64,000 nt of DNA. It comes from Glycera tridactyla (lineage: Eukaryota). The stretch lies in the NCBI GenBank assembly GCA_965644265.1, contig OZ286469.1, positions 47,058,001 to 47,122,000 of the forward strand, in the 5' to 3' direction. Position numbers and translations under genes: made by a program. Numbering within the stretch: position 1 is the first letter of the stretch; each line of letters starts with the position of its first letter. Shown here piece after piece: positions 916 to 9,900 of the stretch. The notes below the pieces were generated by a model. The model saw only the letters and a program-made list of their open reading frames with translations. It searched no databases and was not told the DNA's origin.

Positions 916-3900
916 CTGGAAAAACAATGAGAACGTTGCTTAGCAAGTTGATGATAAGTACATGCAGGTAGGCGTGCTGATAATGATTTGCAAATCCAGC
1001 TCTTTGGAATTCCGAATCGACTTTACATCCTGTCTGAGAAGTGTGTCACAGTGCAAATCATTGGGCGTCCGTCTGTTTATCAGATTATTCCAAGCATTCA
1101 CTTAGTAAAGAATATTTGAATTAGACCTGAAGCCATTTTTTATATTGGGCAGTTTTATATCAGTTTTTACATCAAGGCGCACTCAATCTCCGACCATATC
1201 CAATCATCAAAAACAGGTAGCTTCAAAGCAAAACACAACTCAGGCTGCCTGGAAGCCGCCTGGTTGGTCTTACTCAGCCACAGAACTACACGAGACCCGG
1301 AATATACCCTTATCATAAGAAGGGATAGCATAATTACTGAAGTATATAGGACAATACATGATGATGTCAGTACGCGATCTCTTCCAGCCCACATGTTCAG
1401 CCTTCCTCATTATTACAAGAAGGAATAACAGAATTTCTGAGCTATATAGGACAATACATGATGATGTCAGTACGCAATCTCTTCCAGCCCACATGTTCAG
1501 TCTACGAAATACTAGAGAAAATAAATATATACGGATATCTGGATGTTCAAGTCATCATCATACGCCACTTACATTGACCCTATATTATCCGCACCCCATA
1601 GATAATGAGGTAAAATTAGAATATGATGAAGACAATATCGGGAGGTGTGGTCGACGAGAATTGATATTCATTTCACAAAAACAGGTACTTACAGCTCAGT
1701 AGTATCAAGAGGAATATCAGTGGGGAAACTTTCAAGACCAGCACTGCTACACCGGATGGTGGTTCCATCACATTTACAATCGGCAGGACAATGAGCAGCT
1801 GAGTCACAGCTACTCTCACCATCTGCACAAAGAAAAGATAAATCCTTTAAGTTTGTCGAGGATATGCACATGCTTTACAAGACCAGCAACATTACATCCT
1901 TTTTCAGAGATACTAATAACAACTTCCTACATCCATCATATACAGACCTTGATTTGAAGTCCAAAAATGACATCTTGAGTGTCAGTGAATTCAATGAATT
2001 TTCGCTTCCCGTTGTGAGGCCAGAAGGAGAAGTCTTGAATGATCCCATTGTATGGGCGTCTCAATATAGCGCAGGTGGTACTCACGATATGTAAAACTAC
2101 CCAAACAACCCTAACGGGATAAGCCCCTAGTGTCCAGAGTATAAACTATGTGGTATGATATCTTGGGGACAATCGATAGACATCGGTTGGTAATGACTCT
2201 ATCTCACAGACATCTCAACATTTATTCACGTATATGAATCCAAGATACAATAACGAGGCAGTTTTCAAAAAGTTTCCAGAATCAGTAACGTTTCTCTCGT
2301 TATATCAAGACGGAATATTACATTTTACGAATAATATAACGGTGAAACACAGATCATCCAATACAAATGGTGATCACATTCATGCATTTTGTTTCAGTCT
2401 TAATTGTTTGTAATTTGCTATTTGGCAGAGTTCAGACTATAGTCTTTACTGACAATTGTCGACACTCACATTTTACATGGATGCAAGCAGATGGCTAATT
2501 GCAAAATTAGGCATGCAATATTCTATTTGACTATTATAAATCCCAGTGCTCTGAGAAAATTATCCCCGCTACCTTAGCGCTTTTATGACCATTTACATAA
2601 TATACTACACGAAATCACTAGTTTCATTATTCCTATAATGGTCCTTTTCAGATTACATCTCTCATAATTACAGTGACCTATTAATGTAATACTGCTCTTG
2701 ACTACAAGAGAGCTCTGCATGGAGCAATTGGTCCGACCTTTCCCTTAGAAAATTGACGAATGGATATACAATGTGACAAAATGGAAATAAATGAAGAAAA
2801 TGATTACCGGATCAGTACAGAAACAAGAGATCGTCAAAACAAGGTCGGACATTGAAATGATAGAATGTGTATTACTCTCAACCATAGCGAGGTACATGTT
2901 GAATCCAGACAGTTAGAGGGCGATAGGATAAAGTTGCTTACATCCACATACTTGAGCGCTATTCCGTGGCTTAATTTGTGGTGTATATTTGAAATGAGAT
3001 GATGTATTGGTCTCAAGTGACAATGACAAACATAGATGTTTTTGTAGAAAGGGCAAACATAAAGATCATAGTGCCATATGAGTTGAACAATGTTTTTGCC
3101 CAGTCACATTGAGATATCGGCCTAGATACACCAATATAATCCTCATGAAATACTTATCGAAGAACTCATAGCACTATTCCTGACCCAATTCATCGAATTT
3201 TCTTATCGCATCAAATATAATATGTTTAATTTTTCCCGGTGCACACTACTTCAAGAAGAGGTCAGCTCAACCAAATGATTTCTANNNNNNNNNNNNNNNN
3301 NNNNNNNNNNNNNNNNNNNNNNNNNNNNNNNNNNNNNNNNNNNNNNNNNNNNNNNNNNNNNNNNNNNNNNNNNNNNNNNNNNNNNNNNNNNNNNNNNNNN
3401 NNNNNNNNNNNNNNNNNNNNNNNNNNNNNNNNNNNNNNNNNNNNNNNNNNNNNNNNNNNNNNNNNNNNNNNNNNNNNNNNNNNNNNNNNNNNNNNTTCTC
3501 ATGTAAACTTTATGTCAGTCCAAGACTTCTGATTAAGGCACCCACAGTCAGCACCCCTGACCATTATTCCACATAATCATCAAACTATAGAGGGAATTTC
3601 TGGGAGGAGCTATTGAGCTAGCACTGCGATACATCACCCCTTTCCAGTAGTCATGATATCATGGTACATGCCGTATGTACACATTTTCTATGTAAAATCC
3701 ATGGCAGTGTCATGATGCATGCACTACAGGTCCATGCAATGTGTCAAATACCCGAAATGTGTTTGTGTATACCCAAACCGATTTCTCGGTTACCACATGT
3801 CCACATAACCCCCCCCCCCGCCCACACACACACAGACCCACACGGGGATTGCCAATTACTCTACATATTAGAGCACATGAAATTCGATCTCATTTTGATA

Positions 3901-6900
3901 GTTTTCATGGAGAATGATTTACAGAACCTGCTGCGACCTTTGAAAGTCAATTATTTCTGCATGACACACACATACACACAAAAACATGCTCACAAATAGT
4001 AACACAGAACACAGAAAGGATACAAATCAGTATATATCTCACGGTAGAGTATGGTGAGTACAGTCGAAGCTTTGGAGTGCATTACACGGAATTAGAGGGA
4101 GTAAAATTTAGAGGGAGTGATTACTTATCTATTTGAGAGAGAATCAGTGAATAGAAATGAGAGTATCACCTGCAGATCAAACAAGAAAATGTTCCTCAGC
4201 AATGTGATGAAGAAGGTTGGTATGACTGTTCCCATTCCAGATGAATGTTCCATATCAACAGAATTTTAAATCAATGAGGGCATGCATTTGAGCATCAGTC
4301 ACTTCCCTCATTTTCACAAAGAATGATCATTTGTTCGACATGAAATATCATATAACGACTGTCAAAAACATTTAGATTCTCTATGTAGGTCAGCACCAAA
4401 GCTGCTCTTCAATGTAAAAAAAAATCTGTGTTTCATATCGTAGCATCTACACGAAAGGGTAGCGTTGAATATGTTGACAATCCTCTCATTTAGGTAAAAC
4501 AATGAGAATTTCAAAGTTTGAAGAAACAGTATACAGGATTTCTACAAGGCATGCAGTGAGAATTAAATTATGCTCTAGCAATAAGGCAAGGTATCTGCTA
4601 TTTCTGAATCTTGGCGAACAGAAACCATAAAGCTTATGTATATACAAGTTCTGTAGATATAATGAACGAACATTTGACGAATCAAGACTCATCCAATGGT
4701 ACGTATGCAATTCCATCATTCATCTTCAATACGAAGATACTTCAATCCCTTAGGAAGGTTTCCATAAGGTAGGTATGGTTTCGGATACATCAAGCTTCAG
4801 ATAGCAGTTAGAGCAGGTGATATCTAGTAGAAAGAAGGGACATTAGTATGGACGTACTTTCGCCATTTTCTGTGCATCTGTTGGCTGGAGTTTCCTCAGG
4901 ACGCGGTTGCATACATTGCCAATCTGTGATATAAGAGGGACGATCAAAATAAAAGAATATCAAACAATAGTACCCAAAAATCTATCGAACTTCAAAGAGA
5001 AATAGTTCAGATGATTACAAAAAGCTGCTCATGGCTAACATTGGCACTAGAATAAAGAAGAATATTGTCATGACAATTCGAAAAGATGGATCTTGGTCTT
5101 ATCACAAAACTACCCTCCTCCTTTAATTGAATGTCCTATGTGAAGGATGAAGCTTTTTAGATGGGTTGACATATTTTACTCCTCTCCCAAAACAATACAC
5201 TTATGTACAATATAATAACTCACTTATGTTTTGGAACAAGGACTTGTTCTCCTTTCTGACCTTTACCTGGTTTTCTCCCATCATTATCCCCACCGTTATA
5301 TGTATGTCTGAAGCAGCACAGATCTTGTCTCATCGAAATATACAAGTTGTATGCCTAAGAATCATTGCTGCTTATCCAACACACAGGTTCTCAAAGCTAT
5401 GTCATCAAAGCTGGTTACTACGATTCCGACAATTTTTTCAACATTCATTCTTCCCTACCATGATCCATAGCGAATGAATCTTTATAGGCAATTTCCAATC
5501 CCCCTGCCACAAGAATCTGTCATATGAGTACAGCCCTCCATGAAACCTTGAATTCCCTAACTTGTGGAAGAAACGACAAGTAGTTATTCATTTCTGAATG
5601 ACATTGTAATTGGTAACCATACTTTGAAAGGAAATTGTGGTAAACAGGGACACCAACTCAACGGATACATCAATCAGGTAAATTAGACCAAATCATGGTA
5701 GTGAATCATAAGTAATCACCTTCGAGCACACAGAAAATAACTCTTTCCATTCAGTGAATCCAGAAACTGACCCAAAGCAAGACACCTGCCACAGCATTTT
5801 GCATGAAAAGAAAGGCTGTATAGCTTTATTCGTACAATCCATACATTTCATACATTTGGAATTTCATCTGATCTATGACAAGCAATTTGATGTGACAGCA
5901 TTTTTGGAGTTGTAGCAATATGGAGCTAGTTCTAAAACATTCTCATGTGATTCGATATTTTTCACGGGAACCTCGCAGGTAATAATATTGGTTACTCAAA
6001 GAAGTGCTTTTCCTTCAATTTGTTGGAATTTTTAAAGGAAAATGGCAGCATCTGAGATCCATCCCTACACATCCTGTTTTTACCGCAGCAATTTTGGCAG
6101 GGAAATGCTGTGACTCTTATAATTTGATTCTACTTCGTGAATGAAATGCCACATCATAACTTGAATTAGGATGTGCACAATAATCCCCTCCAGCATTATT
6201 TGCATTTATGGTAGATTCCTCACAACATTAATGATAAGGAACGCAGCCTTGGCTTGTTGAAAATAGCAGGCATCTTCATGTAAATACAATGCATTGCTAT
6301 GCGAATCCAGCATATATAACATTGCAAATGGCCGTGACGTTCAAATGTAGATAAAATGGGCCTAGTTTGAATCCGCTTTGAAAACCAGTAATATTGGGAA
6401 TCCCAGATTTCGGATATGAAGGAATCTATGTATTCCGTGAAGAGGATTACGAATTCTTTTCGAGCACTCTTACTGAAAAGGACGTCTGAAATGTACGAAA
6501 CTGATGGATAAGTACTGTAGCTGTCGTTAGGAAGTGACCCAAGTAGAAAGGAGGGGTGACCAAGGAAAGCTGTCTGTGCCCGTGTATATTAATCCATTGT
6601 GATCATACATAGAACAGGTGAGCTGAGACTTACCTATCTCATCGGAACAACATTTAGGGGCTCCTGGATGGCATCCAACCTCATTGCTGGCTGTAAACAA
6701 ATGAAACAAATCGATGTTTCAAACCCAATCACTCCACTCTTCACATGGTGTTTCCTAAGTGGCTTTGGTTGTTATGGTTTTCAACAGTTTGAGCATGTTC
6801 ATGTTTCCAAAGCGAAACCTTGTAATACTAATCTGTATATTAATTATCTCCATTCTCCAGGCCAAATATATCATACATTTCTCTCTTGATAAGATGAGCT

Positions 6901-9900
6901 ACTGGCGCTCACAAAGATCCATTCTCTCGCTGTTTCAGAAGCGAGATCGAGCGTTTGTGTCGAAAAGGACTCATAAATGTTCAGCGTTCAACATTGACAC
7001 ACCGATGCAAATTCAAGATAGCTATGTGGAGACTTCAAATGAAAAATTGTACATCCAATAGATGACTTTAACATCATCATAGAGGGGATGGATCTAATAA
7101 TCAGGCCTGCAGTAGACATTTGGAGCTCAGAATTTTCTCCATCAGATCGACGAGGGATCTGGTATGAGGGTACACTGTCAGCCGATTGAGACTGGAAAAC
7201 TGCTTGAAGGAGAAAATAGTCTTGGATACAGACCTTCACATTTGAACTCTGTATTTTTCAGATGTTTGATGGGTATGTCTTGCAGCATTGTGGGACTGGA
7301 ACATCTAGGGTTTCCGGTCACAATATTCTTCTTCTTCAACCAATCAGACAACCAACCCAGATGGCAATTGCATGCGAACGAATTTGATAGCAGGTTCCTG
7401 AAAAGAGATGAGAATAGGATAACTATGCGAATGCGAGACACGAAGTGCAATACATGCATGCCATTTTTGGTGGATATATTACATTCATGTAGATGCTGCA
7501 TACCAAGCACCAAGGGCAAGTTTTGTTGCACTAAAGGATGACCTTCGGGCGATTCAATACCTTAGGCAATATTTGACCCAAAGCTGGTCATAAACTGCTG
7601 CTTCAGTATCAACGCCAGATGTTCTCTCTTTACTGTCACTCCATGAAATTATAAATGTGGTGGAAGCAATCTTTCAATGCTAGCGTATCTCGAATGATCA
7701 CAAAGAGGGTCACACCCGCATTAGAAGGCACAGGCTATTATTGATTTCAACTTCCAAACCATTGATACTTCATAAAGACCAACAGAAAACGATGGGAAAA
7801 CTGATTTTGATTCTCAAAGTTGGTATTCAACATCACACAAATATACCTCTTAAAGGAATAGAAAAAGGATATGCATGTGTTCAACGATATCATGTGCATT
7901 TTGATAGCAGAAACGAAGGCAATAATCTAAGGGTCTCTTCCAAATATAAGGTGACAAGACTGGAACCAAGCGGAATACGGATATTTAATTATGATATGGA
8001 GATACATCATCAGCAAAATCATGACTTCAGGGAGGAGGAAGAATGGCAGAGTGAAACTCACAGCGTAGTCAAAGACTTGAGGCGATCGAACGACCCCGGC
8101 TGGATGCATCGAATTCCATTTCCATACAAGGACCTGCGAAAAAGATGAAAGTACAGTTGATGGGAGAACACTCAGCCTACCCACGTCTATTTCAAACTCA
8201 CCTTTCCCACGAACAGCTGACATTCCCATGTCTCATTATGGATATTAGTTCATAATTTTAAAAAATCGCAAAGAATTCGAAGAGAGACATTTGACAAAAT
8301 ACCTTTTTTAGGATATGATGTCCCAATGACTCTGATCAGAGGTCCATCAAATGCCAGAATTTCATTTACTGGATCCAATCTTTTCCCAAGCGTACACAAA
8401 AAGAGCTGCCACATATGCTTTCGTCTTTCCACTGTAAGAAATCTTAATCTAAGGGGTTTTCCAGTGTGCAGACTGTACTATGGAATATACACAAATTCGT
8501 CTCTCATAATTGAGAAGTTGTCCCATCAAGTAAAGAATTGTTCCATAGGTTTGAGTTTGTGTAGAGCATTTGTCTCATTCACTTCTCTACTCAGAAATTT
8601 CCCTGCCTTTCCCTCGATTATGCGTCTAAACGTAGGGACGACCAGATTGATATTTTCAGTGAGCATATCCTGAGGTCTAATTGAAAATATCGGAAAAAAT
8701 CAGCGTCGATATCTGATCGGAAAAGATATGCAAAAAGGAGCGACTCTGTTGTAATTATATCAAAATACCGCCATATTACATTCATCGTTGGCAATAAAAT
8801 GACAAAATGAGGTGATATACGACACTACTATGATGTTTTCTACTTACAGCAATACGAGAGATTCCAAGTCGACGAAGGTTGTATTCTTGACGCAGGTGAT
8901 CTTGTTACTTCGCAACATCCTGCAAATTTGGAGTAGCAAAATGGTGATATCATCGCCTTCTCCACGAGAACTGACGTCACTGACGCCATCGCCGCCGCCA
9001 TTACCGACACCACCACAAGTATCCTTATACAATGGCGACAGCGACGGCGTCGTGAACACCATCATCCCAACATCATCAGCATCAACACCAGAAGGCAATA
9101 TGTGCGTTTTGTGACAGGTCCGGCAAAAGCGTGCACGCACGCACGCACAAACATTCAAGGGATCATCGATTTTTCAACGATAGCGTGTCCAACTTATAGC
9201 AGTAATATGGCAAAAAGCTGCGAAGGGTCATTTCTGACCTGAGTACATCTCTCCTCAAATATAAATATAAGTTTTTGAATCCAGTGATCAATCATCGTTC
9301 GTATCATCAAACCTGTATGAATCAAAACNNNNNNNNNNNNNNNNNNNNNNNNNNNNNNNNNNNNNNNNNNNNNNNNNNNNNNNNNNNNNNNNNNNNNNNN
9401 NNNNNNNNNNNNNNNNNNNNNNNNNNNNNNNNNNNNNNNNNNNNNNNNNNNNNNNNNNNNNNNNNNNNNNNNNNNNNNNNNNNNNNNNNNNNNNNNNNNN
9501 NNNNNNNNNTCCCACACGCACAAATACGCACACACGCACGCATGCACGCACAATGATGAACTTACAGTGTCTCAATATCCCTCAGACCATGGAACATCTC
9601 GCTGCTGATTCGTGTCAAAAGATTCTCCGTCAGACGCCTGAAACCAACAACATGTCAATCTCAACTGTCATAAAAAGAAGCGAGTGCAGCGAATAGAATA
9701 GCTCAACATCATCTTTGGAGGATTTAGTTGGGAAAATTAATGAAATGTTTCACGATTCAATATCACAATAATTCTGAAAACACCTTATGCTTAGTGTACC
9801 TGATTTGGAATACAAGTATATCAATATGACATGATTGTATCTTTCAATCAATTGAAGGTTTTTGTTGGATGGTTTGGCTTCAACTTCAATGTCACTGGAT

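What the first reader, a model, noticed from the sequence alone, without database searches (positions are those of the whole stretch)
6634..6690. Extra Cys-rich 57-nt exon in the Slit D3-D4 linker: a candidate cassette module
Seen: strong splice sites (tttgtttacag / TAG|gtaagt), 57 nt, phase 1-1, stop-free. It inserts [19 protein letters not shown] between the D3 C-cap (FKCE) and the D4 N-cap (DGESSC). Recalled knowledge: human SLIT2 and Drosophila Slit have a short linker here with no CC motif. Inference: the exon adds three Cys beside the extra Cys of SSCD, giving four Cys that could form a small disulfide-bonded module. It sits just before D4, the dimerisation domain. Skipping preserves frame and restores a vertebrate-like linker, so it could be an isoform switch for D3-D4 geometry or dimerisation.
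Basis: partly seen in the sequence, partly recalled or inferred. Interest (0 to 1): 0.72.

Follow-up and report, generated by a model that had tools for sequence, protein, structure and literature searches.

The report
Lophotrochozoan Slit linker exon, real and constitutive
The 57-base exon is a genuine part of this (annelid-like) Slit gene; it encodes a cysteine-bearing linker piece found in every mollusc, annelid, ribbon-worm and brachiopod Slit examined and in no other animal group sampled, and no evidence from relatives suggests it is switched on and off.

Summary
On the minus strand, 6690..6634 is a stop-free 57-nt exon in phase 1-1. It has a strong acceptor and a GTAAGT donor, and it lies between the Slit D3 C-cap exon (7397..7234) and the D4 N-cap exon (1822..1693).

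It is not a chance ORF. A profile built from 23 other Slit linkers hits only this ORF in the six-frame window (E 8e-8). The motif N-E-x-G-C-x-x-G-x-x-x-C-C, with invariant C-x6-CC spacing, occupies the same place in all 28 lophotrochozoan Slits tabulated. It is absent from a rotifer, ecdysozoans, deuterostomes and xenacoelomorphs.

In the nemertean Tubulanus and in a closer unnamed relative, the motif is likewise a separate phase 1-1 exon (60 nt and 72 nt).

The cassette idea finds no support in relatives. All annotated isoforms and transcript-derived proteins seen that cover the junction keep the insert, although other Slit exons are annotated as alternative. I could not get RNA data for this species.

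The "four-Cys module" is unproven. AlphaFold gives the linker pLDDT below 50. A cysteine census (2 D3-repeat Cys plus 4 linker Cys) fits extra disulfide stapling of the linker to D3 at least as well.

The exon is ordinary as a gene feature and modestly interesting as a clade-specific change. This scan had not noted it before on other DNA.

The parts
6634..6690 (-). Linker-insert exon, 57 nt, phase 1-1. It encodes (A)[18 protein letters not shown] and contains the conserved G-C-x2-G-x3-C-C motif.
   Evidence: sequence, translation; HMM E 8.4e-8, unique hit in window; orthologous motif in 28 lophotrochozoan Slits; same separate exon in Tubulanus L001 and relative L002.
6691..6710 (-). Acceptor region: pyrimidine-rich tract plus cAG (AG at 6692-6691).
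   Evidence: best acceptor/donor combination among 151 frame-compatible candidates in the intron.
6628..6633 (-). Donor gtaagt after exon-final TAG.
7234..7397 (-). Slit D3 C-terminal cap (LRRCT) exon, 164 nt. It ends ...FKCE + G (phase 1).
   Evidence: 68% identical to Owenia Slit residues 649-704; best library hits are Slit D3 C-caps.
1693..1822 (-). Slit D4 N-terminal cap exon, 130 nt. It starts AT (completing a D codon) then [17 protein letters not shown]..., and holds the ancestral linker Cys (SSC) plus the four N-cap Cys.
8062..8133 (-). D3 LRR5 exon (72 nt) with Cys codon TGC at 8108-8106 (GIRCIQPG). This is a candidate disulfide partner for the insert.
   Evidence: this Cys is present in all lophotrochozoan and most other protostome Slits, and absent in deuterostomes.
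8848..8919 (-). D3 LRR4 exon (72 nt) with Cys codon TGC at 8894-8892 (NKITCV). This is the second repeat Cys of D3.
1823..6633 (-). Downstream intron (4811 nt, with a masked N run at 3285-3495). It holds no second copy of the insert exon.
6691..7233 (-). Upstream intron (543 nt).

Best explanation
The stretch is a genuine and most likely constitutive coding exon of the Slit orthologue of a lophotrochozoan; the Slit is closest to annelid Slit.

The exon lies in the phase-1 intron that separates the D3 C-cap and D4 N-cap exons. It lengthens the D3-D4 linker by 19 residues that carry an invariant C-x6-CC motif.

Shown:
- The exon and its motif are orthologous to a segment present in every mollusc, annelid, nemertean and brachiopod Slit examined.
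- It is encoded as its own phase 1-1 exon in at least two other species.
- It is absent from a rotifer, ecdysozoans, deuterostomes and xenacoelomorphs.

Inferred origin: it arose once, by exonisation inside an older linker intron in the lophotrochozoan stem, and has been kept since.

Inferred mechanism (about 40% confidence): lophotrochozoan Slits have six 'extra' cysteines around this junction. Two are on D3 repeats LRR4 and LRR5, three are in the insert, and one is the ancestral linker Cys. Most other Slits have two. The insert therefore most likely adds two disulfides: a small intra-linker loop closed across C-x6-C(C), and a second staple from the linker to the flank of D3. This would hold the start of the dimerising D4 domain more rigidly against D3.
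For: - Sequence and splice sites.
- Homology: P0002 (Owenia) was found with the D3 C-cap exon alone and shows ...FKCE-KLGENSVACHSGAPLCC.... There are 28 lophotrochozoan linkers with the motif. The insert HMM hits only this ORF in the window (E 8.4e-8).
- Exon architecture: Tubulanus L001 35231-35290 is ccag|CG...ATGG|gtaagt, 60 nt, phase 1-1. Relative L002 has a 72-nt phase 1-1 exon about 700 nt after its C-cap exon. DNA conservation is confined to the exon core, and most differences there are synonymous.
- Constitutive use in relatives: every isoform and transcript-derived protein seen that covers the junction includes it. Annotated alternative events lie elsewhere.
- Cysteine census: 2+4=6 in 26 of 28 lophotrochozoans and in the window itself. 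The unnamed protein P0174 has a longer linker with two further Cys, so parity is kept.
- The fly D3 crystal construct 1w8a ends exactly at the linker Cys and has ten Cys, consistent with a bond between a repeat Cys and the linker Cys.
Against: - No RNA data could be obtained for this species.
- No transcript fragment of this species is in the protein collection.
- AlphaFold2 of the Tubulanus D3-linker-D4 gives pLDDT below 50 for the whole linker and pTM 0.56, so no structure supports any disulfide topology.
- The LRR5 Cys also occurs in arthropods that lack the insert, and five non-lophotrochozoan Slits have an odd count (2+1). Parity arguments are therefore soft.
- Flatworms, bryozoans, phoronids and other spiralian groups were not sampled.
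Confidence: 0.78

Rival explanations
1. Regulated cassette exon. The exon would be included or skipped by tissue or stage. Skipping would restore a short arthropod- or vertebrate-like linker and so change D3-D4 geometry or dimerisation.
For: - It is symmetrical (phase 1-1), and skipping keeps the frame and gives FKCE-D-GESSCD.
- There is a precedent for a linker cassette in vertebrate SLIT2: exon 15, the 8-residue AKEQYFIP piece between D2 and D3 (PMC7720527; seen in P0178).
- RNA of this species is untested.
Against: - None of the roughly 35 annotated isoforms in 10 species lacks it, nor does any of the further models and transcript contigs seen. The same annotations do list skipped LRR exons, a KG micro-variant and an EGF block.
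- Both splice sites are strong.
- Skipping would leave an odd number of cysteines (2 repeat Cys + 1 linker Cys) in a protein whose clade keeps 2+4 almost without exception.
Confidence: 0.12
2. Self-contained four-Cys mini-module. The three insert Cys plus the SC Cys of the D4 exon would form two disulfides among themselves, as a small knot independent of D3.
For: - Four Cys lie within about 20 residues, and the C-x6-CC spacing is invariant.
- The number of linker Cys is even in all lophotrochozoans, including the six-Cys P0174.
Against: - The SC Cys is ancestral and present in all Slits as the only linker Cys, where it must pair outside the linker. The fly D3 construct 1w8a has ten Cys including it.
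- Lophotrochozoans keep two repeat Cys in D3, which would then need to pair with each other.
- The spacing between CC and SC varies from 9 to 42 residues.
- AlphaFold gives no confident fold.
Confidence: 0.25
3. Chance open reading frame with splice-like flanks (a pseudo-exon) that is never spliced in.
For: The intron holds 151 frame-compatible AG..GT stretches, so some good-looking ones are expected by chance.
Against: - The profile hit is unique and significant.
- The same motif sits at the same place in 28 orthologues, including transcript-derived sequences.
- The same exon is present in two other genomes, with mostly synonymous differences in its core.
Confidence: 0.01

Closest known systems
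D3-D4 linker of annotated lophotrochozoan Slit proteins (e.g. Owenia fusiformis P0002, Tubulanus polymorphus P0154, Paralvinella palmiformis P0371, Aplysia, Crassostrea, Octopus models)
   Same: Same position (right after the last Cys of the D3 C-cap). Same motif N-E-x-G-C-x2-G-x3-C-C with C-x6-CC. In Tubulanus it is also a separate phase 1-1 exon. Same 2+4 cysteine census.
   Different: Length after the CC and the flanking residues vary (exon 57 nt here, 60 nt in Tubulanus, 72 nt in L002).
Standard Slit D3-D4 linker of vertebrates, amphioxus, hemichordates, arthropods and Drosophila (structures of single domains: 2v70, 2wfh, 1w8a)
   Same: Same flanking domains and caps, and the same single ancestral linker Cys (..NSC..) before the D4 N-cap. 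The vertebrate genomic ORF fragments continue with unrelated residues just after the C-cap, which suggests a linker intron within about one codon of the same place (inference).
   Different: The linker is short (13-19 residues from the last C-cap Cys to the first N-cap Cys, against 32-35 in typical lophotrochozoans), has no C-x6-CC, and mostly has only one repeat Cys in D3. No solved structure spans D3-D4, so the effect of the insert cannot be read from known structures.
Vertebrate SLIT2 exon 15 cassette (Slit2-deltaE15; PMC7720527 citing Yang et al. 2015)
   Same: A short, frame-neutral exon in an inter-domain linker of the Slit LRR region.
   Different: It lies between D2 and D3, has 8 residues without Cys, and is demonstrably alternative. 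For the exon here no skipping is seen in any relative.
Conserved microexon 6b of Robo1/2 (PMC12308364 citing Johnson et al. 2019)
   Same: A small conserved exon in the same signalling pathway.
   Different: It is in the receptor rather than the ligand, it is regulated by NOVA, and its alternative use is shown experimentally.

Membership tests
Slit (secreted axon-guidance ligand with four LRR domains D1-D4) | Tandem LRR domains with LRRNT and LRRCT caps, in the order D2 C-cap, D3 N-cap, five D3 repeats, D3 C-cap, D4 N-cap | tested here: met
   The exon-by-exon tblastn and scan against Owenia Slit finds the D2 repeats, D2 C-cap (34627-34469), D3 N-cap (17754-17611), D3 LRR1-5, D3 C-cap and D4 N-cap in order on the minus strand.
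Slit (secreted axon-guidance ligand with four LRR domains D1-D4) | Best database relatives are Slit orthologues | tested here: met
   The D3 C-cap exon alone retrieves full-length Slits at E 1e-38 to 1e-25, with the match at their D3 C-cap. Named hits are slit homologues.
Slit (secreted axon-guidance ligand with four LRR domains D1-D4) | EGF repeats, laminin-G domain and C-terminal cystine knot after D4 | not testable with these tools
   These parts lie beyond coordinate 1 of the window.
Lophotrochozoan Slit D3-D4 linker insert | G-C-x2-G-x3-C-C motif with C-x6-CC spacing, placed 6-10 residues after the last D3 C-cap Cys | tested here: met
   The window has [16 protein letters not shown]. The profile hit is E 8.4e-8. 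The spacing is identical in all 28 orthologues.
Lophotrochozoan Slit D3-D4 linker insert | Encoded by its own exon, phase 1-1 | tested here: met
   Window 57 nt; Tubulanus 60 nt; L002 72 nt.
Lophotrochozoan Slit D3-D4 linker insert | Accompanied by two repeat Cys (LRR4 and LRR5) in D3 | tested here: met
   Cys codons at 8894-8892 and 8108-8106. Census.
Alternatively spliced cassette exon | Length a multiple of three, so skipping is frame-neutral | tested here: met
   57 nt, phase 1-1.
Alternatively spliced cassette exon | Both inclusion and skipping forms observed in transcripts | tested here: not met
   This could be tested in relatives only: no form seen that covers the junction skips the exon. 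In this species it is not testable, because no RNA run was listed and no transcript fragment was found.
Alternatively spliced cassette exon | Sub-optimal splice sites and/or conserved flanking intron sequence | tested here: not met
   It has the top-scoring sites in the intron. The flanks are not alignable with L002 or L001, though those species are distant.
Autonomous disulfide-rich mini-domain | Confidently predicted independent fold | tested here: not met
   AlphaFold2 on a 35-sequence alignment gives pLDDT below 50 for linker residues 220-246, against above 90 for D3 and D4.
Autonomous disulfide-rich mini-domain | Even number of Cys within the module itself | tested here: inconclusive
   The exon has three Cys, or four with the ancestral SC Cys. 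Counting the two D3 repeat Cys gives six. The pairing is unknown.

The most novel reading that the evidence does not exclude
The insert would be a single, ancient exonisation in the linker intron of Slit that marks Lophotrochozoa in the strict sense (molluscs, annelids, nemerteans, brachiopods) to the exclusion of rotifers. It would turn the usual single disulfide tether between D3 and the linker into a three-disulfide clamp. That would change how the D4 dimerisation domain is held, and so how Slit dimers present D2 to Robo in this clade. A rarer version: in some cells of this worm the exon is skipped, giving an isoform with an unpaired Cys.
Probability: 0.3. Interest if true: 0.55.

Novelty: new member of a known kind. 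Interest (0 to 1): 0.33.

Why it matters
For annotating this genome, the exon should be included in the Slit model; a homology-only model based on fly or vertebrate Slit would miss it.

More broadly, the insert is a clean presence/absence character. It is present in all 28 lophotrochozoan Slits tabulated and absent in 22 tabulated Slits from other groups. It could serve as a rare genomic change for placing disputed spiralian groups such as flatworms, bryozoans, phoronids, entoprocts and chaetognaths.

It also shows that the Slit LRR region, usually treated as invariant in architecture, has a clade-specific cysteine-bearing addition next to the dimerisation domain. No solved structure spans that junction.

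I found no paper describing it. Searches returned nothing on it. The segment is, however, already in many public gene models, so the sequence itself is not new.

Tried and rejected
1. RNA evidence. The look-up of sequencing runs on 1600-7500 listed no RNA run. The stretch was mostly intron, so RNA contigs may have fallen under the word threshold.

2. Transcript fragments of this species. A word search with the stop-free ORF 7561-7181, scoring the C-cap part, found only four genomic ORFs of relatives.

3. Origin by duplication of the D4 N-cap start. Insert versus N-cap alignment scores do not exceed composition-preserving shuffles in any of seven species, so this is rejected as unsupported.

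4. Co-occurrence of the LRR5 Cys with the insert as proof of pairing. This fails as a strict correlation, because arthropods, a rotifer and a nematomorph have that Cys without the insert.

5. Structure. PDB holds only single Slit domains.

6. Genomic loci. For Owenia, Lingula and Ostrea the proteins were not on record. The Patella gene is too long to fetch. The contig of the closest relative (P0006, 81% identity) had no DNA served.

7. The Howitt et al. 2004 paper on the fly D3 structure is not held. The statement that the linker Cys bonds a repeat Cys therefore rests on my memory plus the Cys count of chain 1w8a.

8. A second copy or mutually exclusive twin of the exon in the window: none found.
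Full report
**1. The observation**

Reading the minus strand shows the exon exactly as described:
- The acceptor is tttcatttgtttacag|, with the exon starting at 6690.
- The exon is 57 nt and stop-free.
- The donor is TAG|gtaagt, with the last exon base at 6634.

The exon upstream (7397..7234) encodes a leucine-rich-repeat C-terminal cap ending ...NTEFKCE plus one base G. The exon downstream (1822..1693) begins with AT and encodes [17 protein letters not shown]..., an LRR N-terminal cap. The split codons give Ala (G|CC) at the first junction and Asp (G|AT) at the second. Skipping would also give Asp (G|AT), so both forms are in frame.

The 5411-nt intron contains 151 AG..GT stretches that are open in the right phase. 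This one scores best on a simple splice-site count. That alone would not prove it is used.

**2. What it is**

No RNA run could be listed for the region, so I turned to relatives.

A whole-library search with the D3 C-cap exon alone returned full-length Slit proteins. One of them, P0002 (later identified as Owenia fusiformis, an annelid), continues after ...DFKCE with KLGENSVACHSGAPLCCTKAG... before the D4 N-cap. This is clearly the same motif as the window's [14 protein letters not shown].

Two word searches seeded with P0002 and three cluster look-ups gave named Slits from many phyla. The result is clear-cut.

Groups in which every Slit has x-N-[ED]-x-G-C-x-x-G-x-x-x-C-C at this place, with C-x6-CC invariant:
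- gastropods, bivalves and cephalopods
- the annelids Owenia and Paralvinella
- the nemerteans Lineus and Tubulanus
- the brachiopod Lingula

Groups in which the Slit has a short linker with one Cys:
- the rotifer Adineta and the nematomorph Gordionus
- chelicerates, myriapods, an amphipod and insects
- hemichordates, amphioxus, lamprey and vertebrate SLIT1/2/3
- four xenacoelomorph Slits

An HMM built from 23 of these inserts (the window excluded) and run with all filters off on the six-frame translation of the whole window finds a single significant hit. That hit is the ORF 6718-6530 (minus) that contains the exon, at E 8.4e-8. The next hit has E 0.06. There is thus no second or mutually exclusive copy.

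**3. Exon architecture in relatives**

The genomic locus of Tubulanus Slit (L001) shows three things:
- The D3 C-cap exon ends ...TGT GAA C|gtaagc.
- A separate 60-nt exon follows at 35231-35290: ccag|CG AGT AAT GAA ATT GGT TGC CAT CCT ... ATG G|gtaagt.
- The D4 N-cap exon starts tcag|GC ATA GAA AAC TCC TGT.

A 4.8-kb genomic contig of a closer, unnamed relative (L002; its C-cap is 72% identical to the window) has a 72-nt phase 1-1 exon about 700 nt after its C-cap exon. It encodes ...ATNEVGCHPSMPICCAPEGL.

In a three-way DNA alignment only the exon core aligns. Within it, most differences between the window and L002 are synonymous: N, E, G, C, P, C and C codons differ only at third positions.

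The exon is therefore old, under protein-level constraint, and always symmetrical in phase.

Vertebrate genomic ORF fragments (e.g. ...FTCD|DGKK...) continue with unrelated residues right after the C-cap. This suggests that an intron lies within about one codon of the same place there. The simplest history is an exonisation inside an ancestral linker intron in the lophotrochozoan stem. That step is inference.

**4. Whose gene**

Scored exon by exon, the window's Slit is closest to Owenia, then an unnamed JGI sequence, Lingula and the nemerteans. This agrees with earlier notes of this scan that the genome is probably an annelid's.

D3 is complete in the window:
- N-cap 17754-17611
- LRR1 17060-16986
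- LRR2 10159-10088
- LRR3 9636-9565
- LRR4 8919-8848
- LRR5 8133-8062
- C-cap 7397-7234

**5. Cassette or constitutive?**

Where it can be tested, the evidence is against it.
- In ten species with RefSeq-type isoform sets (X1 to X5, about 35 proteins covering the junction), all carry the insert.
- So do oyster isoforms and transcript-length Logan contigs (about 6.2 kb encoding 1455-1468 residues).
- So do further Logan or JGI transcript-like sequences resembling mussel, clam and cephalopod Slit.

The same annotations do record alternative events elsewhere:
- a two-residue KG after the D2 C-cap (Haliotis, Lineus)
- skipping of single LRR exons of 23-24 residues (Haliotis, Ostrea, Lingula)
- a 79-residue EGF block
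- C-terminal variants

The lack of a skipped form at this exon is therefore not due to a lack of isoform annotation.

The splice sites are strong. Skipping would also leave 2+1 cysteines where the clade keeps 2+4.

I could not test this species itself. The run search was blank, and my query of 5.9 kb of mostly intron may have caused that. No transcript fragment of this species is in the protein collection. I put the cassette reading at about 12%.

**6. How it may work**

D4 is the Slit dimerisation domain. Its N-cap disulfides are Cys727-733 and Cys731-740 in human SLIT2 (PMC2693880). The Cys just upstream (..NSC..) is therefore not part of the cap.

Every Slit has that one linker Cys and at least one Cys on a D3 repeat. 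The fly D3 crystal construct 1w8a ends exactly at the linker Cys and has ten Cys. This fits my recollection of Howitt et al. 2004 (not held) that this Cys is bonded back to a D3 repeat, tethering the linker.

The cysteine census is as follows.

| Group | D3 repeat Cys | Linker Cys | Total |
|---|---|---|---|
| Most non-lophotrochozoans | 1 | 1 | 2 |
| 26 of 28 lophotrochozoans, and the window | 2 (LRR4, LRR5) | 4 | 6 |
| P0174 (longer linker) | 2 | 6 | 8 |

The best-fitting model is three disulfides instead of one. Vicinal CC residues rarely bond each other, so the first insert Cys probably closes a small loop onto one of the CC pair. The other CC residue and the ancestral Cys would then go to the two D3 repeat Cys.

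This is inference, and it has three weaknesses:
- AlphaFold2 on a 35-sequence alignment models D3 and D4 at pLDDT above 90, but the linker (residues 220-246 of the Tubulanus segment) below 50, with pTM 0.56.
- The LRR5 Cys also exists in arthropods without the insert.
- Five outgroup Slits have an odd 2+1 count.

**7. Comparison with what is known, and novelty**

The closest known things are the identical segments in public gene models of other lophotrochozoan Slits. The window's exon is a new member of that set.

The nearest described phenomenon in the literature is the SLIT2 exon 15 cassette in the D2-D3 linker (PMC7720527). It differs in place, in content (no Cys) and in being demonstrably alternative.

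I found no paper that mentions a lophotrochozoan-specific Cys insert in Slit. A recent comparative review (PMC12308364) and a leech Slit/Robo paper (PMC10071614) describe the standard architecture only. The phylogenetic pattern may therefore be unreported, but it is a modest finding.

**8. Limits and steps left out**

Exons were searched one by one by reference, and the fold used an orthologue (Tubulanus P0154:487-926) with an alignment of database proteins.

Short exon peptides copied from tool translations were typed into scripts as alignment probes.

Masked N runs (17 in the window) were left as they are.

**Verdict**

The exon is real and orthologous to a clade-wide Slit linker insert. The cassette interpretation is unsupported, and the disulfide-module interpretation is open. 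Interest is about 0.33.

Noticed in passing
window 8108-8106 and 8894-8892 (minus); alignment: The position of the D3 repeat Cys differs by clade. Deuterostomes and xenacoelomorphs have it on LRR4 only. Flies, ticks, a rotifer and others have it on LRR5 only. Lophotrochozoans and some arthropods have both. The linker tether point seems to have moved or doubled during evolution.
   Followed up: partly
P0174 (unnamed JGI transcript-like protein), linker after its D3 C-cap: One relative has the insert plus about 27 further residues with two more Cys (six linker Cys in all), so the linker can expand while keeping an even Cys count.
   Followed up: partly
window 29923-29947 (another first-stage note, s1-340526); protein isoforms of Haliotis and Lineus: Annotated isoforms of Haliotis and Lineus Slit differ by two residues (KG) immediately after the D2 C-cap (KFKC). 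This is the same linker where the other note proposes a microexon and where vertebrate SLIT2 exon 15 lies. I did not examine the window candidate itself.
   Followed up: partly
Protein isoforms P0288, P0210, P0277 versus their longer forms: Single LRR exons of 23-24 residues are annotated as skipped in abalone (D3), oyster (D1) and Lingula (D4) Slit. This changes the repeat number of one LRR domain and could change its curvature.
   Followed up: no
window 1693-1822 (minus): The D4 N-cap start of this species ([12 protein letters not shown]) departs from the motif SCDPRAYCPPKC, which is almost invariant in the other lophotrochozoans.
   Followed up: no
window 16769-16953 and 32039-32168 (minus-strand ORF listing): There are long (TG/CA)n microsatellites in Slit introns. 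Seventeen masked N runs of 130-343 bases are scattered through the window.
   Followed up: no
L002 3092-3104: In the relative's insert exon, a second AG 12 nt downstream of the main acceptor would give a 60-nt version aligned with the window's exon start. This is a possible alternative acceptor or simply drift in exon length.
   Followed up: no
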